From positions 124,001 through 188,000 of IMG/VR virus record IMGVR_UViG_3300021338_000003: a DNA stretch of 64,000 nucleotides. One strand, given 5' to 3'. The position numbers were made by a program, and so were the translations under genes. Under the pieces are notes generated by a model. The model was given only the letters and a program-made list of their open reading frames with translations. It made no database searches and was not told the DNA's origin. How positions within the stretch are numbered: the stretch's first letter is position 1; every line of letters starts with the position of its first letter. Positions 23,572-51,918 of this stretch are shown piece by piece.

Positions 23572-24510
23572 GTGAACAAGATCCGCCAGCATGTCATTCG
23601 GGCCGAGTCCAATTGGGTTGCCGTTGACACCCGAAAATGGTTAGGAAATTCTACCCAGTGGAGAGCGGAAGAAGTTGCAAAATTCTTCCGAGAATTTGTT
23701 GGTATTGAGTCTCTTGATGAGGACACCGGAACCTTCATTTTCGTAGTGGACGAAAATGAAGAACGTGACCTCCTTGAAGCCATGGAGGACTACGTACCAG
23801 TTGAATTGTCGGTAAATCCGGACATCGTTGCAAATGTATGTCACGGATGGCAGGAGATAGCAGCCTCGGCGAAAGACATGTTGAAATCCGAGGTTAAGGA
23901 AGCTGCCAAGCAAATCTTGCAACTCGTCAAGACCCTCGCAAAAAGGGAAGAAGTATATGTTGTACGTAGAAACCGACGATTTCTACGTCTCATCATCAAC
24001 TTCCACGACATTCCCGATTTTGGGGAACAGGTCCAGGGGATTCTCGACCGAGTTCGAGGGAAAGACTTGACTATTTCCACGGACATTTTTGTGAAGAACT
24101 TTGATGGTCTGTCTTGGCCCCCCAAGGCTGATACTGTGAGAAGTTTTCTCAAATCCCAAGACATTCAGTTCGACGAGTACACCGATGACCACCCGGATGA
24201 GGGATTTGACACCAGATATCCGTTCTGGAGAATTCCAGTCAGGGACGCTCACAAGTACAAGGACCTCTCCAAAACATGGATAGGCGGTTCTATATACGTC
24301 CAACGGTTCTCGGGTCGATTGGTTGACATTCTCAATGCAGAATTCGGAAGGGAACCCTTCGATTTCGAAGAACACCTAGAGAAGGTCAGAACGCTTTTCG
24401 GACAGCGTTTTGGAATCTTTGAGTTTCGAAATGGGGAAATCCTTGTCAATAAGGACACATACGATTTTGATGCGCTGGTTACTGAACACCTTCGGCGGAT
24501 GAGACAATGA
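23572..24510 (+). CDS. hypothetical protein, paralog A
   Basis: Shares FFREFVGI, ERDLLEAMEDY, NFHDIPD and KYKDLSK blocks with 24507..25652. Confidence 0.7.
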   Translation: MNKIRQHVIRAESNWVAVDTRKWLGNSTQWRAEEVAKFFREFVGIESLDEDTGTFIFVVDENEERDLLEAMEDYVPVELSVNPDIVANVCHGWQEIAASAKDMLKSEVKEAAKQILQLVKTLAKREEVYVVRRNRRFLRLIINFHDIPDFGEQVQGILDRVRGKDLTISTDIFVKNFDGLSWPPKADTVRSFLKSQDIQFDEYTDDHPDEGFDTRYPFWRIPVRDAHKYKDLSKTWIGGSIYVQRFSGRLVDILNAEFGREPFDFEEHLEKVRTLFGQRFGIFEFRNGEILVNKDTYDFDALVTEHLRRMRQ

Positions 24511-25652
24511 ATAAGGTCAAAAAAGCCATTCTCCGAGCCTCCTTGGAGGGTGAAAAGACAGAAGTCCCCCTTGGTCGGTGGAGTTATCACATCGGAAATG
24601 GTGGCACTGCCGAATTCTTTCGGGAGCATGTAGGGATTACCTCTGCAGAACCCGCCCCACATCACGGTGGGACAATCACTGTCGATTCCACGGACGAACG
24701 TGACGCCTTGGAAGCCATGGAAGACTATGCTGTTTTCCGCCTCAGCACGGGAAGGTACGAAAAAGAGTGGAGTCTGACTGACACAGAGCGCAGAAATTAT
24801 CTGAAGGTACCATCAGATTTGTTTCCGGACGAAGTTGAGGAAGTATACATTCGCACTGTAGAATGGGTAGACCATCGTTTGGATAAGTTGGACGCGTTCA
24901 GGGTCACCTGGGGAAGTAGTAAGTGGGTCAAATATGTCAGCGGGAAAACCTGTGACATCGTTGTCAACATCCATGACATTCAAGACCTCATCGGGGAATT
25001 GCAGGGTATCATCAACGAAGTCCGAGGCAAGGATAAGACCCTGACTCTACAAAAGATTAAGAGGGCATTCTCTCTGCACAATGGCCCCTATGACAACAAT
25101 GTTGTCCGGTTCTTTGATACAACAGGCATACAAGCCACAAAATATGACCTCGGATCCGGTCCGAAAGGTACAGTGTGGCGGGTTCCTCCTCGGGACTACA
25201 AAAAGTATCGAGATTTGACGAAGTCTCTAGAGGCCCACTACATTGGAGTTGGTAACACCAATGACCCTCTTGGGGCAGAATTTGACCGGCTGTTCCAAAG
25301 GGTTACTGACCACCCAAGCCGCCAAATGATGATGGTCCATGCTATCATCGGCAAGGGGTGGCCAGGGGTCTGGCTGATGAACCGGGACGAGGTACTAGTC
25401 GACCCCAATATATTCGACTTTGAAGGTCTAGCTGAGGAATACCTCAAGATGGCCGAGGTATACGTGACCCCCGAGATGTTGGAGTTGCAGAACCTGGTCG
25501 AATCACACCCCCAGATGGAGTTTGAGAAGTATCAGGGCAACCGGTTCATTTCGGTCAGGGACGGTGGTATAGAGGTATTTCGCATTATGGTTGGGAACAA
25601 AGCCCGGTTGGTGACGTCCATGCTCGAAGAATTCATGAGGGAATACTTCTAA
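24507..25652 (+). CDS. hypothetical protein, paralog B
   Basis: FFREHVGI, ERDALEAMEDY, NIHDIQD, KYRDLTK. Confidence 0.7.
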   Translation: MNKVKKAILRASLEGEKTEVPLGRWSYHIGNGGTAEFFREHVGITSAEPAPHHGGTITVDSTDERDALEAMEDYAVFRLSTGRYEKEWSLTDTERRNYLKVPSDLFPDEVEEVYIRTVEWVDHRLDKLDAFRVTWGSSKWVKYVSGKTCDIVVNIHDIQDLIGELQGIINEVRGKDKTLTLQKIKRAFSLHNGPYDNNVVRFFDTTGIQATKYDLGSGPKGTVWRVPPRDYKKYRDLTKSLEAHYIGVGNTNDPLGAEFDRLFQRVTDHPSRQMMMVHAIIGKGWPGVWLMNRDEVLVDPNIFDFEGLAEEYLKMAEVYVTPEMLELQNLVESHPQMEFEKYQGNRFISVRDGGIEVFRIMVGNKARLVTSMLEEFMREYF

Positions 25653-27302: not shown

Positions 27303-28052
27303 ATGCCCAAGCTCTACGAAATCGTCGCCATCCGCAAGGGTGTCAAGCAGCGTGCCTACACGGCCCTTACCCAGGTGCACCGTGATTCCGAGCGGGAAGG
27401 GGCCTACAAGGGTCTCCGCCGGGTGTACACCAAGGCTTTCGAGGATGGAATGGACCTTCCTCCTGAAAACCAGAAGGTGTCCCTCAAGGCTACGGATATC
27501 ATCGACCAGACCCGTGACATTCTTACGGAACAGTGGGACATCGAAGCCAGCCAGGAGTATGGCAACCAGTCGGCCCGTGCCGATGTTGTCCTTCCGAACG
27601 GGGATGTTCTACTCAGTGACGTTCCTGTGACATTCCTTCTCCATATGGAGAAGCAGATGTCTGACCTTCGCACCAAGGTATCGGTTCTTCCCACCCTCCC
27701 AACCGACGCGGATTGGAAATGGGCCGAAAACCAAGGATATTGGCAGTCCGAGCCGGTCAAGAGCGCTCGTACCTCCACATATGATGACCATCAGGTGATC
27801 GTCCCTCCTACCGACCACCACCCAGCTCAGGTGGCCGCGGTGAAGAAGAGCCGGCTCGAAGGACACTGGGAGACCACCCACCTCAACGGAAGTCTCAGCG
27901 TCCCCCAGAAGCGGGAGCTGCTTGACCGTATCGATGAGGTTCGGGACGCCATCAAGCAGGCTCGTACCCGAGCCAATGATACGGCGGTGGAGAAGCAGTA
28001 CGTCGCTGCTACCCTCCTCAACCATATTTTCGACCGCTTCGACCGCCGTTAG
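27303..28052 (+). CDS. conserved hypothetical protein (MxKLxxIxAxxKGVK-type family)
   Basis: VPVTFLLHMEKQ...LPTL...W...GxWxTxxLxG pattern; GGAG RBS. Confidence 0.7.
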   Translation: MPKLYEIVAIRKGVKQRAYTALTQVHRDSEREGAYKGLRRVYTKAFEDGMDLPPENQKVSLKATDIIDQTRDILTEQWDIEASQEYGNQSARADVVLPNGDVLLSDVPVTFLLHMEKQMSDLRTKVSVLPTLPTDADWKWAENQGYWQSEPVKSARTSTYDDHQVIVPPTDHHPAQVAAVKKSRLEGHWETTHLNGSLSVPQKRELLDRIDEVRDAIKQARTRANDTAVEKQYVAATLLNHIFDRFDRR

Positions 28053-28773: not shown

Positions 28774-29994
28774 ATGAATGTCCTACGTATGGTCGTAGCC
28801 GCCTTTGAGAGCGTCCGGCCCAACGACATAGTGACTGTATACCACGGCACGTCTCTATCCCGGGTTCTCGAACTCATCAACGGGTTTGATGCCAACCGTG
28901 AGGTCAAACGAGAATACGGAGGACCCAGGCACAAGGGATTGTTTGTCAGTCCCGACCCCGAGTTGGCCTCTAGGTTTGCCCACTACGGAGAAGTGGTCCT
29001 AGAAATCAAAGTTCGTGCCAAGAACCTCCATGGGACGGATTACTCCGGTCGAAGTCTTCAAGAGCAGGGTGCAGACGGCACTTGGATAGAAGAGAAGTAT
29101 CCAGACTCGTTCCGCCCCTACCTCACATATACCATGAACCAAAGTCACGAGCCCCAGGCGTTGCTTCGTGGCCTGGTTCGCCCCCGTCAAATCACTCGGG
29201 TTCGATACAAGCCCTTCAACGGGCAACCCCAGTGGTATACTCGCAAGGAGTTCCTTAACCTTGGGTTGACCACGAAAGGTATGAATGGGGCGTATGGGCC
29301 TGACCATGACGTCAAGGACGTCGGTTGGGATCTTTCCAGTCCCAAGTACACCCTAGACGAATACATCAAACTCCTATCCTCTGCCCTGAATGTCAGTGAG
29401 GACCGTATCCGTCGATCTTTTGATCTCATGGCCAAGATGGGCCGTTTTGAGCATATTGAAGAACTCGCTCATGATGCCGGTATGGGTCCCACCGCGCGCA
29501 AGAAGTTCATGGACCTGGTGAGAGACGGCACCATGGTCACGGCGGCTTCTCGAAAGTTTTCATACACTGGGTATAGGTGCCCTAATGTCCATTCCGAGCT
29601 GGTAGACTGGTCCACCGAGGCTTGGTGGTATGAAGTCCCCGTGGAAGAGATCGACTGGGAGGATTTTAAGGATCATGTAGACCTTCAACCCCATGAGGTG
29701 TCAGGGTCCGAGTTCCTTCCTTGGAAGGAGGGGTGGGAGGACTGGGAAGACTTCTTGGGTCGCGAGGCTGATTGGTCCGAATCCTTCTATCGGGGCTTGC
29801 TCCCTTCGGGCCGTCCCTTCTTTGTATGGACGGCTTCAGGCGTCGAACATTGGTACACGGAAAGTGGGGACATGGACCCTGAATACGAGGCTCAAATTCT
29901 GCTGTCCGCATATGACGAGCTTCAACAGATCGAAGAAGATGGTGAGGATATCGACCTAGATGTAGTGCGTCGGGTCATACGCAATCACCGCTAG
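28774..29994 (+). CDS. ADP-ribosyltransferase-like domain plus second acidic domain
   Basis: VYHGTS...GF...GLFVSPDPELASRFA...VVLEIKV; start reassigned to ATG 28774 with GGAG RBS. Confidence 0.65.
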   Translation: MNVLRMVVAAFESVRPNDIVTVYHGTSLSRVLELINGFDANREVKREYGGPRHKGLFVSPDPELASRFAHYGEVVLEIKVRAKNLHGTDYSGRSLQEQGADGTWIEEKYPDSFRPYLTYTMNQSHEPQALLRGLVRPRQITRVRYKPFNGQPQWYTRKEFLNLGLTTKGMNGAYGPDHDVKDVGWDLSSPKYTLDEYIKLLSSALNVSEDRIRRSFDLMAKMGRFEHIEELAHDAGMGPTARKKFMDLVRDGTMVTAASRKFSYTGYRCPNVHSELVDWSTEAWWYEVPVEEIDWEDFKDHVDLQPHEVSGSEFLPWKEGWEDWEDFLGREADWSESFYRGLLPSGRPFFVWTASGVEHWYTESGDMDPEYEAQILLSAYDELQQIEEDGEDIDLDVVRRVIRNHR

Positions 29995-32076: not shown

Positions 32077-32766
32077 TTGTCCAGAAATCGCACCGGTCGC
32101 ATCACCATCACCAAGGAAGTTTTCATCCCTCGTAACATCACCGTGGCTGTATCCGGTGGCGTTGATTCGATGGCGGTGTTGGACTTCTTGAATCGAAATC
32201 ACCACGTAACGGCCGCGCACTTCAACCATGGTACCGCTCATGCCTTGGATGCCGAACTCTTGGTGACCAAATTCTGCAAGGATAGGAGTATCCCCCTGGT
32301 CAAGGGACATATGGGGGATGCCAAGAAGCCCCCTGGCCGATCGCCTCAGGATTTTTTCCGAGAACATCGCTATGCCTTCCTTGATCGGTTCTCTGAGACG
32401 GTCATCACTGGACACCATTTGGACGATGTCGTAGAAACTTGGATTTTCTCCAGTCTCCGTGGGCAGTCCAAAATCATCCCTCATATTAGAGGCAATGTGC
32501 TTCGGCCCTTTTTGTCCACCAGGAAGAGTGACTTTGAATACTGGTGTGTCAATCATGATGTCCCGTGGGTCGAGGACCCCTCGAATGCATCCACGGAGTA
32601 TGACAGGGGCTACGTGCGTCATGAGCTTGTTCCGAAGGCACTTCGGATTAACCCCGGTATCCATAAGACCCTCCGCCGAAAGGTAGAAGAGAGTGTTCGT
32701 CCTACCTCAGCAGGTTTGGGGTATACCGGAGTTCTCGATGAACCGCATCCGACAGACCATTGTTGA
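32077..32766 (+). CDS. tilS: tRNA(Ile)-lysidine synthetase, minimal catalytic-domain form
   Basis: PP-loop AVSGGVDSM, HFNHG, TGHHLDDVVET, DPSN...RGYVRHELVP. Confidence 0.88.
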   Translation: MSRNRTGRITITKEVFIPRNITVAVSGGVDSMAVLDFLNRNHHVTAAHFNHGTAHALDAELLVTKFCKDRSIPLVKGHMGDAKKPPGRSPQDFFREHRYAFLDRFSETVITGHHLDDVVETWIFSSLRGQSKIIPHIRGNVLRPFLSTRKSDFEYWCVNHDVPWVEDPSNASTEYDRGYVRHELVPKALRINPGIHKTLRRKVEESVRPTSAGLGYTGVLDEPHPTDHC

Positions 32767-33457
32767 AGCTGCTCGCGCCATCCACGTAGACCGTCGGATA
32801 GTCGAAGAGGTCATCGACCAACTTGGTCGGGACATGGCTCGAAAATTTGGTCCGAAGGTTTCCCCAGGCTACAACCGTAACCCGGTATCAATGCAGACCA
32901 TCACCTTGAAGAACGTGAGAGGTGAAGAGGTCGCAGTAGACGTCGGGTTCACTACCCAAGCTTCCCCAGCTGGGGATTTCGCCCTCGGTGGAGGTATGGG
33001 CTATTACAAGCAGGGCCCCAAGAGGGGTCAGCCCGTGGTGGTCATCAACTTGAATGGCAAATACCCTCATGAGAGCTTCATGAAGGGTGTTGGGAGGCAG
33101 GACGTTGTTCAAGTTCTATTCCACGAATTGACTCATTCAGTTGATGTAGGCAAAGCCACATACAAAGCCAAGAACAAGTCTGGACTACCCTCGTCCCGAG
33201 ACCTCAACCTGGATGAATATTATAATGACCCTCGTGAGGTACGCGCTTTCATGCGAGAGTTGTTCGAAACCATTGCTCCCAGTGTCCGAAAGGTCATGGA
33301 CACATCTTTGGGTGGTCAATGGGGTCTGAATGGTACCATATCTCGTCAGTTGAAAAGCCTGACCGAGTGGCCCGTCATGGTCAAGTATCTGACCTCTTCG
33401 AACAGAAATAGGATACTCAAGGGTTTAGTGACCATGTTCCAAGACGAGGGACTGTAA
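32738..33457 (+). CDS. zincin-like metallopeptidase domain protein
   Basis: LFHELTH (HExxH) and YYNDPREVRAF; ATG 32738 with GGAG RBS. Confidence 0.7.
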   Translation: MNRIRQTIVEAARAIHVDRRIVEEVIDQLGRDMARKFGPKVSPGYNRNPVSMQTITLKNVRGEEVAVDVGFTTQASPAGDFALGGGMGYYKQGPKRGQPVVVINLNGKYPHESFMKGVGRQDVVQVLFHELTHSVDVGKATYKAKNKSGLPSSRDLNLDEYYNDPREVRAFMRELFETIAPSVRKVMDTSLGGQWGLNGTISRQLKSLTEWPVMVKYLTSSNRNRILKGLVTMFQDEGL

Positions 33458-37691: not shown

Positions 37692-38825
37692 TCACGATCG
37701 TTGTACATGGTCTAGCACCACTCGGCGCACCGAGCTTGAGATGGATTTGAGAAGACGAGTCATTTCGTTTGCTATCTCGTCTATCTCCTTGCGAGTCTTA
37801 ACTCCGGGCTGATTTAGGGTCTGGTATCTGGCCCCGAAAGTGTCCTGAAGACCCTCTTTGTACCTCTTTTGGATAGCGGGGGAGGCATACTTGGTAAGAC
37901 CATGGAGAGATCCCTGGCCATAGAACGTCAAGTGGCTATTGGGGTGAGCTTTGATGGTCTCTATGGTATCATCAACAAGGTCTCCTATCGGTTTGGTGAA
38001 CTTTCGTATCCTGGGGTCCGACCGAACGTCTGAAGGAGTCCCGAAGAACCCCGCTGCCACCAGTCCAAGCATGGTGGACAAATGCACTTGGACTTCGACC
38101 CCTCCATCCCATTGGGTTACGGATTTGACTACATATGGTTTCCCGATTTTGTCTCTATTGGACCATACCTGGCCCATAAGGTATCGGGTATCCGAGTTCA
38201 ATTCAGATTCGTGCATGTTAGCAATATATTGGAAAAGACCGCCCGTCTCGTACCCTTCGATGTTTTGGCCCCTCCTGATGAGGTCCTCCCACTCATTGTC
38301 TTCAATCAGACCTCTAATTACCTCGTTGACATCCTTCCCGTGAAGCATATCCCGGAAGCGGCGGATGACTTTGACTACCTCAACCCTCATCTTTCCAGGT
38401 AGGGCTAGGATTTCGTTCTCTGCCGCATACCGGGTCTTGGTGACGTCAATACCCTCCTTGAGGACAGTGCGAAGAATGACCCCACCTTCCCCTAGAAGGA
38501 TTTCTCCTGGGTTGTCAGATATCAGCTTCGCCAGCTGCCTTGTGATGTTGAAAGCTGGAACCGTGGTGGCAAATTGAAACGCCGTTTCGATGTGGGGGCT
38601 CCACGAGGTCAAAGAATCCGAAGAAATAATACCATTCTGGATTTTGGACAGGAACTCCTGAAGTTTTTCCTCGGTGTCGAAACGAAGCCCTCGGAATACC
38701 TCTTTGGACCCTCTAAGAGGGTATCGCGAGACAAGGCTGTCTCGATAAGAAGTAGGGACTGGTCCTTCACCCCGAACATAGTAGAACAATGCCCGGTCAT
38801 CAGGGTCGAGGTCGTAGGGGTCCAT
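37692..38825 (-). CDS. ADP-ribosyltransferase, R-S-E type (Alt/Mod/VIP2-like)
   Basis: VFRGL...LTSWS...AFQFA...GVIL...ENEILALPG. Confidence 0.7.
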   Translation of the reverse strand: MDPYDLDPDDRALFYYVRGEGPVPTSYRDSLVSRYPLRGSKEVFRGLRFDTEEKLQEFLSKIQNGIISSDSLTSWSPHIETAFQFATTVPAFNITRQLAKLISDNPGEILLGEGGVILRTVLKEGIDVTKTRYAAENEILALPGKMRVEVVKVIRRFRDMLHGKDVNEVIRGLIEDNEWEDLIRRGQNIEGYETGGLFQYIANMHESELNSDTRYLMGQVWSNRDKIGKPYVVKSVTQWDGGVEVQVHLSTMLGLVAAGFFGTPSDVRSDPRIRKFTKPIGDLVDDTIETIKAHPNSHLTFYGQGSLHGLTKYASPAIQKRYKEGLQDTFGARYQTLNQPGVKTRKEIDEIANEMTRLLKSISSSVRRVVLDHVQRS

Positions 38826-42994: not shown

Positions 42995-45900
42995 ATGACC
43001 GACGAAATTTTGGGCAAGTATTTCGTGTGTTTGATGCCTCCCAAGATGGCAGAGATACACCAACGCATCCGTCGTGACCTCGAAAAGAAGTTCGGGGAGC
43101 CTATCGACCATTCGGGACCCCCTCATGTGACCGTGAAGTACATCGGGCCCGTGACTCGTGGTGACCATGATGCCCTCTTGGGCAACGTGATGACTCGTTT
43201 TGCTCTCAGGAGTCATCGCAGCCCCTTCCACCTTCGGATTACTGGCATAGACTCTTTCGACCGTATCGAAGGCGGCGGAACACCCCTCTTCCTTCGTGTC
43301 GAGTGTCCCGAGCTTCATGACTTTCGGAAAGAGATGAACGAGGGATGGGACCCCTTCTCGCAACCTGAGAAATTTCCAGACTTTAAGCCCCACATGACCC
43401 TAGGGTATATCAACCGGGACCTGACTTCTGAGGAGAAGGAGTGGCTGGCCAAATATGAGGTCAAACTCACCTCTATCTGTCCTACCGTGGTCCTGACCCG
43501 AAACGCTTATGAAAACGTTCTCGTTCTCAACCTTTCGAATGACCTGACGGCCGCCACTCTAGAGGACTTCAATAAGGCCCCGGACGCGGAGGCCGGAGAG
43601 GACCCTGTCATTCACGAGGTGGCCATCATCCCCCTGCATGAGCGCACCGATGATAACCCAGCCTGGAAGGCTATCGTCGAGGCAGCGTTGGCAAAAACCC
43701 GTTGGTACCACATTCGCTCTAGCGATGCCCGAGGTCTCCACGACCAATGGACCAAACTCTATGGTGAAGGCCCCAACCCCTTCGACCCCCTTTCTAACGT
43801 AGACAAAAATACGGCCTATCTGGCCGGATTTGATGAAGATGACAAGCTCGTTGTCGGTGGAATAGTGCAGGGTGTCTCTTGGGATGGTGACCGTGGGATA
43901 TACGTTCACTACATCGAATCCAAGACCTCCTTCGCTGTGGCTAAACTCATCCAGGATTGGCAGAGAGAGTATGACTTCATCACGGCGGACCTGGAAAACA
44001 AGGGTCTACGACGCCTAGCCTATCGAGCCGGGTTCAAAGAATACGACAAGGGCGTGTACCTTTGGCACCGAGGTACTCCGGGTCCTATTCTGATGTCCTG
44101 GGTTGGTGATAGCACCCTCATGGACCCCTCGAAGTTGACAGCACTTACGAGGGCTCAAGCTCTAACCGCTCGATGGATTGAGGACTCTCAAGTTAAGTCC
44201 GTACCTGTTCACTCCTGGGGGTGGATTGGTGCCGATGGTTCTATAGCCTACGGCACTGGGGACAATGACTATCACGCCCAGCATGCCTTCAGAAAGGTCA
44301 AGGAAGAATACCCATCTGATTTCCGAACTCTTCCAGGGCTGAAGTATTTCACCCAAGCCAGAAACATAGAAGAGGCAGAACGAGCCATTAACAAAGCTCT
44401 TGAGAATGACCCTGATCCATTTGCAGCTGAGGACCTTTTCACGGACCTCATCAGTGAAGCATCAGGCATTCTATTTGGTCATGGCTGGATTCGAGTTACT
44501 CATCCAAATCCTGGCCAATTTGGGTTCAACGGTCTATCTTGGGAGGATGCGTCTGACCGGGCCAAAGAGACCATTCTTGCATACCTGGCCACCTCCACCA
44601 AGCAGTGGAACCTAGACCCAGAGAGTGCTATAGTCTGGATTGACTTCAGCCTAGAAGCCCAAGGCAAGTATACCATGGCCGAGTTCATCGACCGCTTCTA
44701 TGGCCGAAAAGAGGTTGATGAGTTCTTCGGGATTATCATGGCCCGGTCTGACCTCTCCCCGACCTCTGAGGACTACGCGGAGTTCAAGGAGAGCCATGGT
44801 CCTAACCCCGGGTGCTCTCTAGGCCGGGACAAAGATGGGTATTACGTCTACACTCACCGGGGCCGATCGCCCTCCTATAGCAGTCCTGGCGCCATCCCAG
44901 CCTCGAAAGTCAAGCAAATCGAGCGCACAGGTAGTGCTATAGAGGCCAGTACCAAACGCCGATTTTTCCATGGTACCAGCACCGCCTTCCTAGACTCCAT
45001 CAAGCGTGAAGGTCTTAAGGCTACCCCTCCCCAACGGGTATGGGAAGGCAGCCTAGAAGCCATGGATGGATACGTCTACCTGACCACCAGCCTTTGGACT
45101 GCTACCGACCACGCTATGACTGCCTCCCGAAAGTTTCCCGGCGAGAAACTCATTCTCGTGGTCGAATTGGACCGAGATGACCCCCGTATCTTCGCCGACG
45201 AAGACCTCGTTCCCAAGGTATACGGACGCATTGTAGAGCAATGGATGCATCTGGTCCCGAGGCAGGAGCGGATGGAGCTTCACGAGCTTTGGGAGTTGGT
45301 CCATGGTCACCCTCCTGATCCTATCGGGACCAACTCCAGAGAGCACGCCGAGCTTCTGGCCAAGATTGGCGAAGGAATCGGGGACCGCAATGACCATTCC
45401 TTGGGTGGCCTACTCAAAAGGTTTGTCAATCGGGACAACCTCACTATTCCCCGGTTTGCCAAGCTCTACTTCGAAGAGACCGACTCCTCCGACTACCCTC
45501 GGTTCATCAAGTCTGTCACCGAGCGTCTGAACCGAGACATGACCAAATATCTCAAGCACATCGGAATGACCCGATTCATTGACCCTGATAGGGTCGTTGA
45601 TTTCTTGATGAGTTCGACCATCGATGACCTGGACAATGCCTCCAATGAAAGCCAGGGCAACCGGGCTCGATGGTTCGTTCAGCATCGAGACGAATTGGCC
45701 CGAGAGTGGCCCGAATGGTTTGGCCCCGAGGCTGGAATGCTGTCTGGTGAGATGCCAACAGTCGCTGTTCGTGATGACGTCAAGCCCGACGAATACTGGG
45801 TTATTCGGGGCTCATTGCGTGATGTGAAGCGCTATGACGACCTGGAGAATCGAGGAGAGCGTGTTGCTGGTGTTCTGACTGCCTCGACCAAGTGGGATGA

Positions 45901-46459
45901 CGGCATCCTCCTCCATGGGACCGACAAGAAATTCGACCGCTTCAAGGCCGGCGCCTATTGGCGCGGTCACAGCGAGGAAGGCCATGGCCTAATATACTTC
46001 TCGGACCCCAACCGCCGGCCCGGCAGGAAGACCCAGGCCGAACACATCGCCGAGGCTCGGGGATGGTTGGCTGTGGTCCGTTTCGATGAGGCCCGTTCCA
46101 AGCCCTTCCAGCCGACCATCGACGACCAGGCGGCAGACATCGTGAGGGAGGCCGCCAAGCACGAGTGGGTGCAGGCCAGCAATGAGCGGCTCCGCCAGGC
46201 CCTGGGCAACCATATTCCCTATGAGTGGGCCTTCATCATCGCCAAACTCGCCATTCCGAAGGGCTACAACACCTTCAAGTTCTGGGAGCCGTCTGTCCAC
46301 GAATATAGCATCGCCATATCGGATCCGGACCTAGTGGAAATCGTCGAATGGCAGCCCCGAGGCCGGAATGCCATCATGATCGGAAAAATGGTGACAGAGG
46401 AAGTCGAGTTCTGGAAGGCAATTCAAGAGAGAATCGCTGCGAAGCGAGGGGAGTCCTGA
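42995..46459 (+). CDS. polyvalent multidomain protein: 2H phosphoesterase, GNAT-like, GWxxxxG domain, small THR domain, two ART-like domains
   Basis: PHVT and PHMT (2H); FFHGTS...GL...VYLT...DED; LLHGTDKKFDRF...IYFS. Confidence 0.75.
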   Translation: MTDEILGKYFVCLMPPKMAEIHQRIRRDLEKKFGEPIDHSGPPHVTVKYIGPVTRGDHDALLGNVMTRFALRSHRSPFHLRITGIDSFDRIEGGGTPLFLRVECPELHDFRKEMNEGWDPFSQPEKFPDFKPHMTLGYINRDLTSEEKEWLAKYEVKLTSICPTVVLTRNAYENVLVLNLSNDLTAATLEDFNKAPDAEAGEDPVIHEVAIIPLHERTDDNPAWKAIVEAALAKTRWYHIRSSDARGLHDQWTKLYGEGPNPFDPLSNVDKNTAYLAGFDEDDKLVVGGIVQGVSWDGDRGIYVHYIESKTSFAVAKLIQDWQREYDFITADLENKGLRRLAYRAGFKEYDKGVYLWHRGTPGPILMSWVGDSTLMDPSKLTALTRAQALTARWIEDSQVKSVPVHSWGWIGADGSIAYGTGDNDYHAQHAFRKVKEEYPSDFRTLPGLKYFTQARNIEEAERAINKALENDPDPFAAEDLFTDLISEASGILFGHGWIRVTHPNPGQFGFNGLSWEDASDRAKETILAYLATSTKQWNLDPESAIVWIDFSLEAQGKYTMAEFIDRFYGRKEVDEFFGIIMARSDLSPTSEDYAEFKESHGPNPGCSLGRDKDGYYVYTHRGRSPSYSSPGAIPASKVKQIERTGSAIEASTKRRFFHGTSTAFLDSIKREGLKATPPQRVWEGSLEAMDGYVYLTTSLWTATDHAMTASRKFPGEKLILVVELDRDDPRIFADEDLVPKVYGRIVEQWMHLVPRQERMELHELWELVHGHPPDPIGTNSREHAELLAKIGEGIGDRNDHSLGGLLKRFVNRDNLTIPRFAKLYFEETDSSDYPRFIKSVTERLNRDMTKYLKHIGMTRFIDPDRVVDFLMSSTIDDLDNASNESQGNRARWFVQHRDELAREWPEWFGPEAGMLSGEMPTVAVRDDVKPDEYWVIRGSLRDVKRYDDLENRGERVAGVLTASTKWDDGILLHGTDKKFDRFKAGAYWRGHSEEGHGLIYFSDPNRRPGRKTQAEHIAEARGWLAVVRFDEARSKPFQPTIDDQAADIVREAAKHEWVQASNERLRQALGNHIPYEWAFIIAKLAIPKGYNTFKFWEPSVHEYSIAISDPDLVEIVEWQPRGRNAIMIGKMVTEEVEFWKAIQERIAAKRGES

Positions 46460-49400
46460 TGCCCATTACCGCCTACCACTGTGGTCCCCATATCGAACGG
46501 TTCACCCTAGACCGTGTCGGAACCGGAGAGGGTAACATGGCCCTCGGTCCCGGGGTGTACTTTGCCACCAATCCCCACATCGCCCGACGATACTGCAAGT
46601 ATCATGACAACGCCGAATTGACCGTTGTGGAAATAGACGACCGGGGCCTGTACGAGAGTCGGAGTGGCAATCCCGAGCACCTCAAGAAGGGCCTGATAGA
46701 ATTGGCCCGAATGCTCGCTGCTCAAAAAGGCATGACCTCTCTTCCGATGGGTAATACCCTCAAACATGGTCCGGGGTCAGTAGGGGATATCTTCCGAGCT
46801 GTGGGACCCAGGTCCGGTCGGAAGCTCATGTCTACGATCGGCATCACTGGGCTCTTGGAACGCATGCCTGGTTCTAATGGCATCGAAATAGCGGTCTACG
46901 ACCTATCCATTATCCGGATTGTGGATAGAATTGCTCCGGGGTCAATCGAGGCAGCGGCTCCCAAATATAGTCCTCTTCGTGAACTTCAGCCGGGCGAACC
47001 CAAAACGTATGACCTTCACGCATACCATGCCACTAGTACCGACAATTGGCTGCCCATTCGACGCAAGGGTCTAGTGCCCGGGGCATCGAAGCCAGCAGGC
47101 CAGGACTGGATGGGCCGGTGGTCTGGAAAGGCCATATACTTCCACCAAGAGTTTCCAGACCATGAACTGGATAACGCTCATGATGGAGAGAACTTCTGGA
47201 CTATCGTTCTCGAATACCGATTCAGTGAACATGCCGATCGAGTTGTTCCTGATGAAGAATGGGGTAGCATGCACATGACCCCCGAGGCTATAAGGACCAA
47301 AGCCCCGATTGCGGTCGGAAACCGTATACCTTCTACTGACCTTGTAGCCATCCATCTCCCTGATTTGCCTTCAGCCCGAGAGTGGGCCCGAGAAAATGCC
47401 CGGGGCAAGAAGGTTGTATTTCACAAAGATGGAATTCATGCATCGACCGACTACAGCCGAGGCACTGGGTACGATTCGGTTGACGGGTATGAATACCTCA
47501 TCAAAGGTGAGAAAGACGATGGGCTAGAGAGGGCCAGGAAGTGGGGTCTGTCCGACTCCCAATACAAGGTCCAGGAATGTGGTGATGGTCCCCAGTTGGT
47601 CTTGGTGAATGGGGCCATTGACGACTTGGACTGGTTCACCTCCAAGCACAATGAAGAGCTTTTCTACCGCCACCCAGACAATCCTGATCAAGATTGGGTC
47701 CCTTTGTCCCGACACTTCGGCAAGTCAGTAGAAGCCGTCTGGGACGAGCACAAATACCACTCCTGGGCCTGGGTCAGTCCGAAGGGTGAGCTTATCGAGA
47801 TGGAGAACAGAGAAGACCATCGACAATGGGCTCGGGAATATCTGGAGAAAAATGAGGGCAAGTATGCCGGCCCTTGGGAAGCCCACCAAATTCTCCGCGA
47901 GGAAGGGTGGACGGCCATGACCACCCCATTCATCTTCAATGGGCCTGGAGAGGAGCCATGGGACCTCCCTCAGGCGGCCCTTAACACCATCATCGAGACA
48001 GCAATCGAGTATTCCATCGAACTTGGTGCTGACCCCGAGGATATAGACCAGCTTGGTGGGTACATACAGTGGGAAGGCCGGAATGGTCGACTGGAATCGA
48101 TGTCTCTGGCCGATTTCGTGGCCAAATATGGTGGCCGCAAATGGGAGGATAAGCTCTTCAGTGGTATGATGGAGCGCCTTGGTGCCGTTCGAGTTCCAGA
48201 CCTCAAAATAACAAAGAAAGAACTTACTATGATGGGCACGGCTTTCTATGCGTGGGATGGAGACCTCAAAATCGGGTCTTTGCACATCACCCATCCCTTT
48301 GGGCCCGAGGACCGTCGATTCCAATACCTGTCACGGGGGTGTGAGGTCGAGTTTCAAAAACTCCGGGACTCCATGGGTGCCGACTTGAAGCTTTGCCTAG
48401 TAATCTCGTCTGAGGTTTCTAAGGCATATCGAGGAATGGGAGTAGGAGGGAAGCTCTATCGGGAAGCCCTGGACTGGTGCCGCAAAGAAGGAGCAGCCCT
48501 TGGTCCCGACAAGTGTGGCGCAGGGGGACATACCTCAGACGATGCTTTGAAGGTATGGGAATCCCTGAAGAGGGAGTTTCCACATGTCGGGGAGATCATT
48601 GCCGAGGATGAAGGTGAAGACGAGGACTCGGGGTCTAGCACCCAGCGCAACTCCGACCCTCTTCCCTCCGAGTTCCGGGACTACATGAAGGAAAAGGGCA
48701 AGGCATTCACCAGCCCCAAGAGTGGCAACAAGGTCCTCTTCGATTCTCTCCCCTGGGAAGAGCAGCTGAAGCACTACGAGAAGTGGAAGCGGGAGCATGA
48801 CGACGGCCGTGACCATGCTCGGGATGAGGCCGAGGATGAAGAGGCCGAGCATGACGCTGATCTGGCCAACTCCGACAAGAACTTCGAGACCTCCCAAGAA
48901 CGCAAGATGGAGGAGGAGAAGGCTCGGGATAAGGCTGAAAGGGGAGACCCCAAAGATCCCTCGGTGCCCCCAAAGGATAAGCCTCGCCAAATCCTTCCTA
49001 ACGGAGAGCCTGCGGCTACCGGGAACAACCTTCACCCGGACACCCAGGTATCATTCACCGACGTTGCCAATGAGATTGGATGGTCGGACGACGACAAGCG
49101 GGAGTTCCAAGAGGAAATCTTCAAGAAGGAGGCCAAGGAGGTTGATAGTCATGCCTCCAACTTCCGGACTAACCGGGAACGGTATGGCATCGGTATGGCT
49201 ATTCTGATGTTCTTCATGGACCTTGGGGTGTCGGCCCATAATAAGGTCCGGGATTTCGCCAAGGACACCCTGGAGCACATCAAGAAGGACATCGGCCAGA
49301 CCAAGGATGAGGCAGGCCAGGCAGTCGATGAAGCCAACCAACTCAAGCAAGAAGTCATCGACCACTACACGACCGTCCTGAAGGAGGGACCCTCGAAAGC

Positions 49401-50064
49401 GGCCCGAAAGATGGAAGAGAAGGTGGAGGGGTCCTATGATATCATTAACCACTGTCCCCACTGTCAGGGTATCCTTCACGACGGCCCGAGATGGTATCTG
49501 ACTTGTCCTACTCCTGAATGTGGCTACTGTGTGTGCTTCCCCGGGTTCAAAGATATCAAGGGTATTGGCCTACCCGGCCCATGTGAGAGACTCCCAGGCA
49601 CGTTCACTTGGACCCCCATCCCCAAAGATGACCCCCGACTTATCCAGCATCAGGAAAAGGTTAGGCAGAACCTGGACTATTTCAAGACCAAGTTTGGGAT
49701 TGAAGGGTCTACTAATATCAAGGACTGGGTGATAGACCATGGGCCCGAGTTCACTCTCTACCGAGAGGTGATCCTGGAAGACCACGAGGACCTCGATATA
49801 TCCAAGCTCGGCCAATTCTGGACCCCTGACTTCAAGAAGGCTCACAGTCCTTTTGCCCGGGTTGATAGTAAGGTAGGCAAGCCTTGGGTTCTCAAGGTCA
49901 TTGTTCAGGAGGATGACATCGATATGCCTGGGACTATCGCCGCTCTTCGTCGTCATCCTGGGGAGGCGGAGATACGCCTCATCAGAGGTCGAAGGTTGAC
50001 CAACATCCAAGTTCTAGATAGGGAAGGAAACGAGGTCACCACCATCCCTAGAGGAATCGTGTAA
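46459..50064 (+). CDS. polyvalent multidomain protein: two N-terminal ART-like domains, WVSPKG domain, GNAT, Zn ribbon, C-terminal R-S-E-like ART
   Basis: AYHCG...GTGEG...GPGVYFA; AYHATS...GL...IYF...PDEE; VSKAYRGMGVGGKLY; CPHC...CPTPEC; LYRE...LGQFWT...EAEIRL; TGATG coupling fixes the start. Confidence 0.75.
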   Translation: MPITAYHCGPHIERFTLDRVGTGEGNMALGPGVYFATNPHIARRYCKYHDNAELTVVEIDDRGLYESRSGNPEHLKKGLIELARMLAAQKGMTSLPMGNTLKHGPGSVGDIFRAVGPRSGRKLMSTIGITGLLERMPGSNGIEIAVYDLSIIRIVDRIAPGSIEAAAPKYSPLRELQPGEPKTYDLHAYHATSTDNWLPIRRKGLVPGASKPAGQDWMGRWSGKAIYFHQEFPDHELDNAHDGENFWTIVLEYRFSEHADRVVPDEEWGSMHMTPEAIRTKAPIAVGNRIPSTDLVAIHLPDLPSAREWARENARGKKVVFHKDGIHASTDYSRGTGYDSVDGYEYLIKGEKDDGLERARKWGLSDSQYKVQECGDGPQLVLVNGAIDDLDWFTSKHNEELFYRHPDNPDQDWVPLSRHFGKSVEAVWDEHKYHSWAWVSPKGELIEMENREDHRQWAREYLEKNEGKYAGPWEAHQILREEGWTAMTTPFIFNGPGEEPWDLPQAALNTIIETAIEYSIELGADPEDIDQLGGYIQWEGRNGRLESMSLADFVAKYGGRKWEDKLFSGMMERLGAVRVPDLKITKKELTMMGTAFYAWDGDLKIGSLHITHPFGPEDRRFQYLSRGCEVEFQKLRDSMGADLKLCLVISSEVSKAYRGMGVGGKLYREALDWCRKEGAALGPDKCGAGGHTSDDALKVWESLKREFPHVGEIIAEDEGEDEDSGSSTQRNSDPLPSEFRDYMKEKGKAFTSPKSGNKVLFDSLPWEEQLKHYEKWKREHDDGRDHARDEAEDEEAEHDADLANSDKNFETSQERKMEEEKARDKAERGDPKDPSVPPKDKPRQILPNGEPAATGNNLHPDTQVSFTDVANEIGWSDDDKREFQEEIFKKEAKEVDSHASNFRTNRERYGIGMAILMFFMDLGVSAHNKVRDFAKDTLEHIKKDIGQTKDEAGQAVDEANQLKQEVIDHYTTVLKEGPSKAARKMEEKVEGSYDIINHCPHCQGILHDGPRWYLTCPTPECGYCVCFPGFKDIKGIGLPGPCERLPGTFTWTPIPKDDPRLIQHQEKVRQNLDYFKTKFGIEGSTNIKDWVIDHGPEFTLYREVILEDHEDLDISKLGQFWTPDFKKAHSPFARVDSKVGKPWVLKVIVQEDDIDMPGTIAALRRHPGEAEIRLIRGRRLTNIQVLDREGNEVTTIPRGIV

Positions 50065-50065
50065 A

Positions 50066-50095
50066 CTTCACGCCCAGGCAGGAGCGGGCGTGAAG
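50066..50095 (+). terminator. stem-loop after the polyprotein genes
   Basis: CTTCACGCCC...GGGCGTGAAG. Confidence 0.6.
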
Positions 50096-50187
50096 CTATC
50101 ACCCAAGTGGCAAGAATCTCTGCTTTCCAAACAATCCAGAATTCAGCCTACCGAAAACCACATCTTCGGCTTGGTAGGGTCCTGGAC

Positions 50188-50501: not shown

Positions 50502-50843
50502 ATGAACCCGATCGAAGCAGTTGTCAGCAAGCACTCCGTCCAGGCCAAGTCATGGAACGAGGATGACATCGAGGGCTACGCCAACGAGACTCTTCTCCTG
50601 GACGGCACCAACAGTGAGGTCGAGGACCTCTTCAACATCCTTAAGACGCCTCGGAAGGCATGCGCTTACGTCAACGTTGATGGTAAGGATTTCATCGCCT
50701 GGTGCGAGTCAGAGATTGACGAACCCGAGATGATGAAGGCCATCATCTTCAAATACTGCGAAATTAACCTTGACAAGCGCTGTCGTAGTGTCGAAGTTAT
50801 CGAACTGGTCATTACCGGTCGTCCTATGTTCGAGATGGCCTGA
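50502..50843 (+). CDS. hypothetical protein
   Basis: AAGGAGG RBS. Confidence 0.65.
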   Translation: MNPIEAVVSKHSVQAKSWNEDDIEGYANETLLLDGTNSEVEDLFNILKTPRKACAYVNVDGKDFIAWCESEIDEPEMMKAIIFKYCEINLDKRCRSVEVIELVITGRPMFEMA

Positions 50844-50925: not shown

Positions 50926-51918
50926 GTGTCGAACAGCATCCGCAAAGCCATCGCAGACCACATCAACCTGGAGGATGGTCCTATTGATTTGGGGTGGGTT
51001 CACGGCCTCCCTCAGGGCATCACAGTCTATAAGAAAATGAATGTTCTTCACGACGTCGGGGAGATTGCTCTAGGCGGCTTGGACGGTGAGTGGCTCCTCG
51101 ATCGTGAATACACCGAGGGTGTCAAGGATCGACGAAGCACTCAAAAATCCATCACCATTGAAGCCCAAGCTCTGAAGCGAGACATCGACTTCAGGGGTAC
51201 AGCGAGAATGGCCCACAAATATCCCAAGGCACGAGGTGTGATGCTTCGCCGAGGGGCCAGAGTTCATGTGGTTGGATTCTGGGAGCGTGGCGAGTGGATG
51301 GACATCAAGAAGTGGGGCCGTGTAGCCTCGGTGTCCATTCTGGCTGCGGACGAATTGGAGTCCTGGGAGAAGAAGGCCGACGTCGTCTCCAACATTATGG
51401 GTGGGTCGGCTCAGGTGTGGGGTCCTGATGCCCTTCTATTGTCCCTGACCGGACCCGGGGTCAACCTCCATTTCACCCAATCCGGCGATGTTATGACCAT
51501 GGAACTCGGGGCTCTGGGTAATTACGAGGACCTAGCCCAGTGGATTTCTGTCTCCCTACCTCCCGAAGCCCTCAAGGGACGTAAGCCCAGCCAAGAATAC
51601 GAAGAGGCAGAAAACAAGAAGAAGTACCTCCACGAAGTCCTTCTTGATGGTCTCCGCAAGGCCGGGATGCGGGTGAAGATGGAAGGCCATCGTATCTCCG
51701 TGGGCGGGTTTGCGGACATCGTGGAAGTCCTCACCTTCATGTGGGATGAGGAAGCCTCTCAAGCCATCATCGATTACTTCGGCCGTCGTCCCGAGGGGGA
51801 GATCATCGAGACCGACCATGCTGCATCTGCCGAGAAGGGAGAGGATGGGGAGACCACGGAGGACGAGGAGGACGGGGAACTGTCCGAAGAAGAGTTGGAC
51901 GCCCTCGAATCCGCCTAG
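50926..51918 (+). CDS. two-domain protein; N domain resembles a degenerate copy of the C-terminal ART-like domain of 46459..50064
   Basis: ITVYK...LDGEW...RDIDFRGT aligns by eye with FTLYR...LGQFW...DDIDMPGT. Confidence 0.55.
   Translation: MSNSIRKAIADHINLEDGPIDLGWVHGLPQGITVYKKMNVLHDVGEIALGGLDGEWLLDREYTEGVKDRRSTQKSITIEAQALKRDIDFRGTARMAHKYPKARGVMLRRGARVHVVGFWERGEWMDIKKWGRVASVSILAADELESWEKKADVVSNIMGGSAQVWGPDALLLSLTGPGVNLHFTQSGDVMTMELGALGNYEDLAQWISVSLPPEALKGRKPSQEYEEAENKKKYLHEVLLDGLRKAGMRVKMEGHRISVGGFADIVEVLTFMWDEEASQAIIDYFGRRPEGEIIETDHAASAEKGEDGETTEDEEDGELSEEELDALESA

What the first reader, a model, noticed from the sequence alone, without database searches (positions are those of the whole stretch)
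42995..50064. Two coupled ~1200-aa polyproteins with a recurring [ILV]-x-[AG] motif at domain junctions
Seen, protein 1: 2H domain, DLTA/A, GNAT-like, ALTA/R, GW domain, IIMA/R, THR mini-domain, AIEA/S, ART, VLTA/S, ART. Protein 2: ART, SIEA/A, ART, GIHA/S, unknown, SVEA/V, WVSPKG domain, RLGA/V, GNAT, EIIA/E, acidic/helical region, KVEG/S, Zn ribbon, GIEG/S, ART. The same motif separates domains in 28774 (MVTA/AS) and 50926 (SILA/A) and ends the shared N-terminal peptides. Established: polyvalent phage proteins exist, and T4/phiKZ prohead proteases cut head proteins at short Glu-ending motifs. Inference: about 14 effector modules are packaged as concatemers and cut into separate enzymes by an Ala/Gly-specific head protease before injection. 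Domain boundaries were judged by eye and the motif is short.
Basis: partly seen in the sequence, partly recalled or inferred. Interest (0 to 1): 0.8.

Follow-up and report, generated by a model that had tools for sequence, protein, structure and literature searches.

The report
Phage effector polyproteins with Ala-ending cut sites
Two adjacent genes of a 250-kb uncultured jumbo phage each string six to eight enzyme modules together, and the short alanine-ending motif at the joints also marks the capsid, scaffold and protease proteins, so the phage's head protease probably cuts the strings into separate enzymes.

Summary
Window 42995-46459 (1154 aa) and 46459-50064 (1201 aa) are intact, overlapping (TGATG) genes of a ~250-kb metagenomic jumbo phage. 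Its head genes place it near the PaBG/RSL1/Yoloswag group.

Both proteins are polyvalent multi-module proteins: a 2H phosphoesterase, four ART-superfamily modules, a GNAT and several unknown modules.

The loose motif [ILV]-x-[AG] occurs 62 times in the two proteins, so alone it proves nothing. However, nine junctions defined only by homology lie a mean of 2.6 residues from a motif copy. None of 20,000 circular shifts did as well.

At the same junctions in distant relatives, the Ala before the cut is the main feature kept.

The same ending closes an N-terminal leader on at least seven unrelated proteins (P = 2e-7). The motif is most enriched in the scaffold-like protein. It sits at an invariant GE[IL]NA site in 88 of 88 capsid-protein homologues, and at the border of the head protease's own N-terminal part.

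A head maturation protease gene is present (phrog_18299; best fold match T4 gp21).

Protein 1 has no leader, the Gly sites stand alone, and one claimed ART was not confirmed.

This is a new variant of known kinds.

The parts
42995..46459 (+). Protein 1, a 1154-aa polyvalent protein with six segments: 1-186 2H phosphoesterase; 187-392 unknown; 393-583 'GW' domain; 584-651 small domain; 652-963 Tpt1/KptA-like ART plus helical extension; 964-1154 ART-like 'LHGT' module.
46459..50064 (+). Protein 2, a 1201-aa polyvalent protein with eight segments: 1-165 ART-like; 166-328 Tpt1-like ART; 329-426 unknown; 427-576 'WVSPKG' domain (paralogue of P1 393-583); 577-715 GNAT; 716-991 acidic/helical; 992-1083 Cys-rich, Zn-ribbon-like by eye; 1084-1201 unknown (homologous to the first domain of gene 50926). 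The start overlaps the protein 1 stop (TGATG).
43544..43552 (+). Junction motif L-T-A (P1 residues 184-186, DLTA/A), after the 2H domain.
   Evidence: 2H homology ends at or before residue 178. The boundary is not sharp.
44162..44170 (+). Junction motif L-T-A (P1 390-392, ALTA/R). A second LTA lies at 381-383.
   Evidence: By analogy with the RTA/ units before the SW.WI.P.G domains in P0004.
44735..44743 (+). Junction motif I-M-A (P1 581-583, IIMA/R).
   Evidence: Seven homologues start at 583/584, and P0071 repeats end at 584-585. The paralogue alignment ends 1 residue before.
44939..44947 (+). Junction motif I-E-A (P1 649-651, AIEA/S).
   Evidence: Many hits end at 646 and many start at 650-653. 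Ala is conserved in 9 of 9 close homologues, at N-termini or internal junctions.
45875..45883 (+). Junction motif L-T-A (P1 961-963, RVAGVLTA/S).
   Evidence: Hits end at 957-961 and start at 962-970. Relatives have SRTA/K, GITA/S and AKTA/G at the same place.
46945..46953 (+). Junction motif I-E-A (P2 163-165, SIEA/A).
   Evidence: L003 homology ends at 158. The RSL1 ORF117 match starts at 166, after LQTTA/A.
47434..47442 (+). Junction motif I-H-A (P2 326-328, GIHA/S).
   Evidence: P0013 homology ends at 326 and RSL1 at 323.
47728..47736 (+). Junction motif V-E-A (P2 424-426, SVEA/V).
   Evidence: Eight alignments start at 432-435.
48178..48186 (+). Junction motif L-G-A (P2 574-576, RLGA/V).
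   Evidence: Alignments end at 567-588, mode 575. P0004 has KVRA/N, TRTA/G and KTMA/Y at the equivalent ends.
48595..48603 (+). Junction motif I-I-A (P2 713-715, EIIA/E).
   Evidence: GNAT homology ends at 716 and P0020 homology starts at 720. L003 has DVIA/V.
49423..49431 (+). Proposed junction V-E-G (P2 989-991, KVEG/S). Gly stands before the cut.
   Evidence: only. The boundary was not defined independently.
49699..49707 (+). Proposed junction I-E-G (P2 1081-1083, GIEG/S). Gly stands before the cut.
   Evidence: Homology to gene 50926 starts at P2 1086, and there directly after that gene's 10-aa leader.
23572..24510 (+). Leader-bearing protein, MNKIRQHVIRA/E (312 aa). Paralogue of the next gene.
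24507..25652 (+). Leader-bearing protein, MNKVKKAILRA/S (381 aa).
28774..29994 (+). Leader-bearing protein, MNVLRMVVAA/F, with a YHGTS ART-like start and an internal MVTA/A (406 aa).
   Evidence: Its domains were not tested further.
32738..33457 (+). Leader-bearing protein, MNRIRQTIVEA/A, with an HELTH (zincin-like) motif. Homologous to the middle module of polyprotein P0002.
   Evidence: No Pfam hit.
50502..50843 (+). Leader-bearing protein, MNPIEAVVSKHSVQA/K (113 aa).
50926..51918 (+). Protein with the 10-aa leader (V)SNSIRKAIA/D. Its first domain is homologous to P2 1084-1201.
   Evidence: gene call of 330 aa
51960..52907 (+). Leader-bearing protein, MNTLRNVVLVA/N (315 aa).

Best explanation
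Proteins 1 and 2 are polyvalent effector proteins of a jumbo phage: strings of host-modifying enzyme modules (2H phosphoesterase, several ADP-ribosyltransferase-superfamily modules, an acetyltransferase and unknown domains).

Each module is preceded by a short site of the form hydrophobic-x-Ala (P3-P2-P1), usually I/L/V, then T/E/N, then A, often followed by Ser. The phage's serine head-maturation protease (contig 208637-209503, outside the window) recognises this same site in the capsid protein propeptide (GEINA/S), the scaffold, its own N-terminal part, and the ~10-15-residue leaders of a dozen internal proteins.

Inferred sequence of events: the polyproteins are built into the prohead, the protease cuts them at the joints into about 14 separate modules, and these are ejected with the DNA.

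Shown: the module identities, the homology-defined boundaries, the position and conservation of the motif, the presence of the protease, and the motif in head proteins.

Inferred: packaging, cleavage, ejection, and the role of the leaders as capsid-targeting peptides (by analogy with the T4 CTS).
For: (1) Nine homology-defined junctions lie a mean of 2.6 residues from a motif copy. None of 20,000 circular shifts matched this.

(2) At orthologous junctions in relatives with 30-50% identity the flanks vary but Ala before the cut is kept. For the 652 module it is kept in 9 of 9 close homologues, whether N-terminal or internal. The 2038-aa polyprotein P0004 has VKTA/S, GITA/S, TRTA/H, SRTA/S, SRTA/A, TRTA/G, KTMA/Y and KVRA/N at its module borders.

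(3) The same modules occur in other orders, or as single genes whose N-terminal extension ends in the site. Examples are P0005, P0007, P0011 and RSL1 ORF117 (LQTTA/ASKYPP, next to the portal gene). A second leader type, RVAxRYxxA, is N-terminal in P0005, P0009 and P0011 and internal, directly before a module, in P0002, P0008, P0010 and P0012.

(4) The leader M[NS]x[ILV][RKE]...h-x-A occurs in 7 of 110 proteins, P 2e-7. More leaders lie in the head module.

(5) Head protease phrog_18299 E 3e-44, capsid protein phrog_2522 and portal phrog_16240 are present. GE[ILVY]NA is invariant in 88 of 88 capsid-protein homologues, between a variable N-terminal part and the conserved body, and also in RSL1 and PaBG.

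(6) The scaffold-like protein is the most motif-enriched of 110 proteins (11 against 2.5, P 7e-5). Across 28 scaffold homologues [ILV][TEN]A is 2.0-fold and [ILVRK]TA 2.7-fold over shuffles, while controls stay near 1.

(7) The protease family has invariant His132 and Ser201 and a conserved h-x-A/[SG] before the catalytic body. The best fold match of the AF2 model is T4 gp21.

(8) Precedent. T4 Alt and the internal proteins have a CTS and L/I-x-E cleavage (PMC9026906). Herpesvirus assemblin sites are YLQA-T and VQA-S (PMC4498786). PaBG virion proteins, including the capsid protein, are processed (PMC7412058).
Against: - There are no virion or proteomic data for this phage.
- Protein 1 starts directly with its 2H domain and has no leader. 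Protein 2 has only MPITA/Y.
- About 50 further [ILV].[AG] copies lie inside modules, so accessibility or further determinants must be assumed.
- Junctions in relatives prefer R/K at P3, whereas the capsid site is always E-[IL]-N-A, so no single rule is established.
- The conserved Ala could belong to the module itself: P0003 and P0006 start MRLA/TT and MRTA/TT, with only four residues upstream.
- Gly before the cut is seen only twice.
- In SPN3US all mapped substrate cleavages remove N-terminal propeptides rather than separate functional modules (PMC10052503).
- The fold match of the protease to gp21 is weak (E 0.03, TM 0.29/0.46).
Confidence: 0.6

Rival explanations
1. The proteins are cut at these joints, but by another enzyme. 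It could be a co-packaged zincin-like metallopeptidase (window 32738-33457 with HELTH; contig 207735-208181 with HEVCH), as proposed in general for polyvalent proteins, or a host protease.
For: HExxH modules sit inside related polyproteins (P0002, P0008, P0012). In this phage they are encoded as separate, leader-bearing genes. Iyer et al. 2017 predict that embedded peptidases release the modules (PMC5512222).
Against: The conserved determinants lie on the non-prime side (P3 and P1) while P1' varies (A, R, S, V, E, K, T, Y). This fits assemblin/gp21-type serine proteases better than zincins (inference). The same site is invariant in the capsid protein, enriched in the scaffold and present in the protease itself, all of which are classic substrates of the head protease. 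Neither HExxH protein reached any Pfam peptidase family. A signal-peptidase-type A-x-A reading fails because the leaders are short, charged and lack a hydrophobic core.
Confidence: 0.12
2. The proteins stay whole. The Ala-ending motif at the joints is a fossil of gene fusion, each module having once been a stand-alone gene with a leader, or is simply a favoured linker or N-cap sequence.
For: Modules do occur as single genes with leaders in relatives. N4 vRNAP and some conjugative polyvalent proteins are transferred unprocessed (PMC5512222). The Ala could be part of the module (P0003 and P0006).
Against: A fossil should decay. Instead the Ala is kept at junctions across relatives whose linkers are otherwise unalignable. 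It is also kept at junctions before unrelated module types (2H, ART, GW, GNAT, acidic). The leader element RVAxRYxxA is maintained internally.
Confidence: 0.18
3. The motif at the joints is chance, produced by judging boundaries by eye with a degenerate tripeptide.
For: The motif occurs 62 times in 2355 residues.
Against: The circular-shift test on boundaries taken from homology alone gave 0 of 20,000. The motif is conserved across phages. The leader statistics give P 2e-7.
Confidence: 0.03

Closest known systems
Polyvalent proteins of phages and conjugative elements (Iyer, Burroughs, Anand, de Souza, Aravind 2017, PMC5512222)
   Same: Large phage proteins that join 2-15 conflict-related domains (ART, 2H, GNAT; InPase and MPTase nearby). 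They are predicted to be packaged and injected, with mosaic shuffling of modules between relatives.
   Different: That work proposes release by embedded peptidases (zincin MPTase, a C-terminal assemblin-like domain). Proteins 1 and 2 have no peptidase module. Their joints carry the recognition site of a separately encoded head protease. No junction motif was described there, in the parts read.
T4 internal proteins and Alt: capsid targeting sequence plus gp21 cleavage at L/I-x-E (PMC9026906)
   Same: A ~10-residue N-terminal peptide is shared by unrelated packaged proteins and ends in the head-protease site, with the determinants at P3 and P1. Alt is a packaged, ejected ART. The scaffold is cut many times, and the protease has sites in itself.
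   Different: P1 is Ala here, not Glu. The sites are also internal and separate whole modules. The protease is only distantly related (weak fold match). The targeting function of the leaders was not tested.
phiKZ gp175 and SPN3US gp245 prohead proteases and ejection proteins (PMC10052503, PMC5694885)
   Same: Jumbo phages with many internal or ejected head proteins, processed at a three-residue motif (A/S/G-x-E).
   Different: A different lineage (PaBG/RSL1-like head genes) and a different motif. In SPN3US all mapped substrate cleavages remove N-terminal propeptides, whereas here the cuts would release about 14 functional modules.
Herpesvirus assemblin maturation and release sites (e.g. PrV YLQA-T and VQA-S, PMC4498786)
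   Same: A capsid-maturation serine protease that cuts after Ala with a hydrophobic residue at P3 and often Ser after the cut. The capsid site here, E-I-N-A/S, has the same form.
   Different: No sequence relationship was shown, and the catalytic residues here appear to be His/Ser plus an acidic or Ser partner. The resemblance in specificity is an analogy, not a tested membership.
PaBG / Lu11 / RSL1 / Yoloswag-type jumbo phages
   Same: Protease (30-38% identity), capsid protein (25-30%) and the gene order protease-scaffold-capsid. DNA polymerase A has an N-terminal UDG, which PMC7412058 reports for PaBG and its group. PaBG virion proteins are known to be processed (PMC7412058).
   Different: There is no nucleotide similarity to any GenBank phage. 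Protein 1 has no tblastn match among 50,697 phage records. Cleavage sites in that group have not been mapped in the papers read.

Membership tests
Polyvalent proteins (Iyer et al. 2017) | One polypeptide with several unrelated conflict-type domains. | tested here: met
   2H; Tpt1-like ART; ART-like LHGT fold; GNAT; and domains with homologues in other multi-module proteins of 600-2500 aa.
Polyvalent proteins (Iyer et al. 2017) | Encoded by a phage with a portal-terminase packaging system. | tested here: met
   Terminase, portal, protease and capsid protein lie on the same 250,817-bp contig.
Polyvalent proteins (Iyer et al. 2017) | Mosaic recombination of the same modules in relatives. | tested here: met
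   P0002, P0004, P0013 and L003_971 hold the same modules in other orders and numbers.
Polyvalent proteins (Iyer et al. 2017) | Delivered into the host with the DNA. | not testable with these tools
   No virion data. The only hint is the Foldseek hit of the LHGT module to a cyanophage pre-ejectosome chain, 9k3a_B.
Substrates of a prohead (head maturation) protease | A prohead protease gene in the genome. | tested here: met
   L009:14353-15219; phrog_18299 E 3.4e-44; tblastn to annotated head maturation proteases; invariant His132 and Ser201; best fold hit T4 gp21, weak.
Substrates of a prohead (head maturation) protease | The same short site in bona fide head substrates (capsid propeptide, scaffold, protease). 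| tested here: met
   GE[IL]NA in 88 of 88 capsid-protein homologues; scaffold enrichment; protease N-terminal border. That these are cleavage sites is itself inferred.
Substrates of a prohead (head maturation) protease | Cleavage observed at the site. | not testable with these tools
   Needs virion mass spectrometry or an in vitro assay. PaBG shows processing without mapped sites (PMC7412058).
T4-type capsid targeting sequence | A short N-terminal peptide shared by unrelated internal proteins and ending in the protease site. | tested here: met
   7 of 110 proteins against 0.41 expected, P 2e-7; all end in h-x-A at residue 9-15. Further leaders lie in the head module.
T4-type capsid targeting sequence | Present on the two polyproteins themselves. 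| tested here: not met
   Protein 1 begins MTDEILGKYF, directly in the 2H domain. Protein 2 has only MPITA/Y.
   Met for P1 652-963, P1 964-1154, P2 1-165 and P2 166-328. Not met for P2 1084-1201. Catalytic activity was not tested.
Herpesvirus assemblin-like specificity | Cleavage after Ala with a hydrophobic P3. | tested here: inconclusive
   The form of the motif agrees (PMC4498786). Relatives use R/K at P3 at junctions. No cleavage data.

The most novel reading that the evidence does not exclude
A whole lineage of jumbo phages (PaBG/RSL1/Yoloswag-like and many uncultured relatives) has a head protease that cuts after Ala at x-[T/E/N]-A. The lineage would use this site as a universal cassette border. 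Any enzyme module preceded by a ~10-residue leader or a joint ending in this site is loaded into the head and released as a free enzyme. Polyproteins of up to about 3000 aa would then be fused cassettes cut in trans: a DNA-phage counterpart of RNA-virus polyproteins. The invariant GE[IL]NA of the capsid protein would be the ancestral site.
Probability: 0.4. Interest if true: 0.8.

Novelty: new variant of a known kind. Interest (0 to 1): 0.7.

Why it matters
If true, the borders of packaged effector modules in a large, mostly uncultured group of jumbo phages could be read directly from sequence.

That would do three things:
- Turn giant 'hypothetical' proteins into lists of separate injected enzymes: ARTs, a 2H phosphoesterase that could degrade cyclic-nucleotide defence signals, and acetyltransferases.
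- Define the so far unmapped specificity of the head protease of the PaBG/RSL1 group.
- Supply a leader-plus-site tag for loading foreign proteins into such capsids, as the T4 CTS does.

It would also show that phage polyvalent proteins can be processed in trans by the capsid protease rather than by embedded peptidases.

Tried and rejected
- **Searches that found nothing.** Megablast of the region and tblastn of protein 1 against 50,697 phage records gave no match. The word-indexed homologue search found one relative for protein 1 and none for protein 2.
- **Unusable alignment.** A single MAFFT alignment of protein 1 with 137 domain fragments (A1) piled unrelated fragments onto residues 580-750. 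It was not used.
- **ESM Atlas.** Look-alikes for P1 393-583 and 584-651 scored 0.57-0.67, which says nothing.
- **PDB sequence searches.** Empty for the LHGT family, the small domain, the protease and the capsid protein.
- **De novo tripeptide enrichment in scaffolds.** Dominated by conserved blocks and acidic runs. Replaced by targeted patterns with shuffles and controls.
- **Literature.** A string search for the predicted mature capsid N-termini found nothing relevant.
- **Signal peptidase I (A-x-A rule).** Considered and rejected because the leaders are short, charged and lack a hydrophobic core.
- **Frameshift or readthrough fusion of the two genes.** Not pursued. The TGATG overlap with a good Shine-Dalgarno sequence is ordinary translational coupling.

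Full report
**What is there.** The window is positions 124001-188000 of a 250,817-bp viral contig (IMGVR_UViG_3300021338_000003 = JGI Ga0213839_1000090). A 250,597-bp twin assembled elsewhere starts at another point, which suggests a complete, permuted genome.

Protein 1 (42995-46459, 1154 aa) and protein 2 (46459-50064, 1201 aa) are intact. They overlap as TGATG, with GAGGGGAG upstream of the second start, and a hairpin follows the second stop. No GenBank phage is similar at the DNA level, and most neighbouring genes match no PHROG or Pfam family.

**Modules.**
- Pfam finds a 2H phosphoesterase at P1 16-147 and a weak GNAT at P2 649-679.
- A phmmer scan of protein 1 against 1.84 billion representatives gave 262 hits that fall into discrete blocks: 2H (10-178); a small domain (584-646; 62 hits, most ending at their own C-terminus); a 310-residue module (650/651-957/961); and a 160-residue module (962/966-1117/1125).
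- A profile of the 652-963 family hits Tpt1/KptA RNA 2'-phosphotransferases (E 4.6e-5) and, weakly, PARPs.
- The 964-1154 family folds confidently (pLDDT 91.5). Its best structural matches are 6kyf, listed as an anti-CRISPR protein (the ART AcrIF11, from my own knowledge), a cyanophage pre-ejectosome chain, MbcT and NatT.
- hhalign links P2 1-165 to the 964-1154 family (84%) and P2 166-328 to the Tpt1-like family (92%).
- P2 1084-1201 matches neither. Its only relative is the first domain of gene 50926.
- P1 393-583 and P2 427-576 are paralogues of a domain repeated three to four times in P0004 and P0071.
- 'GNAT-like' for P1 187-392 could not be confirmed.

**Is the motif more than chance?** The loose tripeptide occurs 37 and 25 times in the two proteins, so its mere presence near a boundary means little.

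I therefore took boundaries only from where independent homologies start and stop. In protein 1 the markers are 583, 646|651 and 957|964. In protein 2 they are 158|166, 326, 435, 575, 716|720 and 1086. The nine markers lie 0-8 residues (mean 2.6) from a motif copy, and none of 20,000 circular shifts of the motif positions did as well.

**Relatives.**
- At the position of P1 Ala651, nine of nine close homologues have Ala. The upstream residues may be a 4-residue start (MRLA/TT), a 14-18-residue N-terminal peptide, or an internal joint of a polyprotein.
- Before the 964 module, relatives have SRTA/K, AKTA/G and GITA/S.
- The 2038-aa polyprotein P0004 has [RK]-T-A or h-x-A at eight module borders.
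- A related 5.9-kb contig (L003) carries a 647-aa gene followed by a 971-aa gene with the same modules in another arrangement, and with GRTA/G, YRTA/Q, GKTA/S, KITA/Y, IVEA/T and DVIA/V.
- A ~9-residue element, RVAxRYxxA, is N-terminal in three single-module proteins (P0005, P0009, P0011) and internal, directly before a module, in four polyproteins.
- Ralstonia phage RSL1 ORF117 is a stand-alone homologue (49% identity) of P2 166-323. Its 75-residue N-terminal part ends LQTTA/ASKYPP, and the gene lies next to the one annotated as head-tail connector.

Modules are thus units that exist alone or fused, and the unit border carries an Ala-ending site.

**Leaders.** Seven of 110 proteins in 100 kb of the contig start M[NS]x[ILV][RKE], against 0.41 expected (P 2e-7). 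All seven reach h-x-A at residue 9-15. Variants (MSIKKVIEKYETTA/S, MSIKEVIAKYKVTA/S, (V)TIRHIIREQMEIEA/A...MDAITA/S) sit on proteins of the head module. Protein 1 has no such leader and protein 2 has only MPITA/Y.

**Head genes.** Walking the contig found:
- the large terminase with intein(s);
- the portal (phrog_16240, 2e-100);
- an InPase with a leader;
- the head maturation protease (288 aa, phrog_18299, 3.4e-44);
- an acidic 713-aa scaffold-like protein;
- the major head protein (phrog_2522, 7e-35).

The PHROG profile aligns from residue 64 of the capsid protein, just before GEINA70/S71.

In 88 of 88 homologues (29-65% identity), G-E-[ILVY]-N-A is invariant between a variable 31-95-residue N-terminal part and the conserved body. 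RSL1 and PaBG have it too.

The scaffold-like protein is the most [ILV][TEN]A-rich of the 110 proteins (11 against 2.5, P 7e-5), and protein 1 is second. In 28 scaffold homologues from 56 related loci, [ILV][TEN]A is 2.0-fold and [ILVRK]TA 2.7-fold above shuffles. The reversed pattern and the Gly and Ser variants stay near or below 1. These sequences are related, so the counts are not independent.

The protease alignment (27 sequences) has invariant His132, Ser201, Glu251 and Ser253, a Cys cluster, and a conserved h-x-A/[SG] where the variable N-terminal part meets the catalytic body. Its AF2 model (pLDDT 79) finds T4 gp21 as best, though weak, match.

**Mechanism.** The simplest reading joins these facts. 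One serine head protease recognises x-x-Ala, with hydrophobic or basic P3 and polar P2. It matures the capsid protein, digests the scaffold, trims itself, removes the leaders of internal proteins, and cuts the two polyproteins into about 14 pieces inside the prohead. The pieces then leave with the DNA.

This copies the logic of T4: the CTS, L/I-x-E, and the packaged ART Alt (PMC9026906). It also matches phiKZ and SPN3US (A/S/G-x-E, PMC10052503), but with Ala at P1. That is the form of herpesvirus assemblin sites such as VQA-S (PMC4498786). In PaBG, a phage with the same head genes, the capsid protein and several virion proteins are known to be processed, but the sites were not mapped (PMC7412058).

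Packaging, cleavage and ejection of proteins 1 and 2 are inferred, not shown.

**Rivals.**
- *Cutting by zincin-like HExxH proteins.* These occur as modules in related polyproteins and as leader-bearing genes here, as proposed in general for polyvalent proteins (PMC5512222). It is less likely because the site also marks the capsid protein, the scaffold and the protease, and because the conserved positions lie before the cut.
- *No cutting at all (fusion fossils).* This fits the module-plus-leader history. It does not explain why the Ala is kept in otherwise unalignable linkers.
- *Chance.* Excluded.

**Novelty.** Polyvalent proteins and head-protease processing are both known. New here are three things: joints of polyvalent proteins that carry the site of a trans-acting head protease; the Ala-type specificity, with its invariant GE[IL]NA capsid site across a large jumbo-phage lineage; and a leader family analogous to the T4 CTS. 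I found no description of these in the papers read.

Noticed in passing
window 37692-38825 (-): A 377-aa protein with R-S-E type ART-like motifs (FRGLRF, SLTSWS, ENEILALPG). It lies on the opposite strand, has no leader, and has no Pfam or PHROG hit.
   Followed up: no
L009:19795-20976 (contig 214079-215260, outside the window): The major capsid protein family has an invariant G-E-[IL]-N-A pentapeptide in 88 of 88 homologues, also in RSL1 ORF136 and PaBG gp80. It is probably the maturation cleavage site of this jumbo-phage lineage.
   Followed up: yes
L009:1315-5226 (contig 195599-199510): The large terminase subunit is 1303 aa and carries intein sequence (Pfam Intein_splicing). The portal of relative L014 (850 aa) may carry one too.
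   Followed up: no
L009:14353-15219: The head protease family has a conserved Cys cluster (C211, C214, C223) inserted after the catalytic Ser. This suggests a metal-binding insertion, which as far as I know T4 gp21 lacks.
   Followed up: partly
L015:18940-26117 (contig of P0004, NCBI GCA_040384045.1): A second polyprotein, of 3005 aa, lies close downstream of the 2038-aa one. Like protein 1, it begins with a 2H domain.
   Followed up: no
window 50066-50098: An inverted repeat, CTTCACGCC-N11-GGCGTGAAG, lies directly after the stop of protein 2. It is a likely transcription terminator for the two-gene unit.
   Followed up: no
L006:3781-6837 (contig 118708-121764): [quoted passage not shown] PMC7412058 reports this fusion for PaBG and its relatives, which supports the placement of this phage near that group.
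   Followed up: partly
window 44744-44947 (P1 584-651): The small domain (consensus DKDGYYVYTHRxRSxSY...IP) is very common at the C-terminus of short phage proteins: 62 of the 150 best hits, also phrog_3666. It has no known structure or function. Here it is internal, which is unusual.
   Followed up: partly
window 27303-28052: A 249-aa protein matches Pfam DUF7873 over its full length (E 1e-71). It is one of the few neighbours that belongs to a described family.
   Followed up: no
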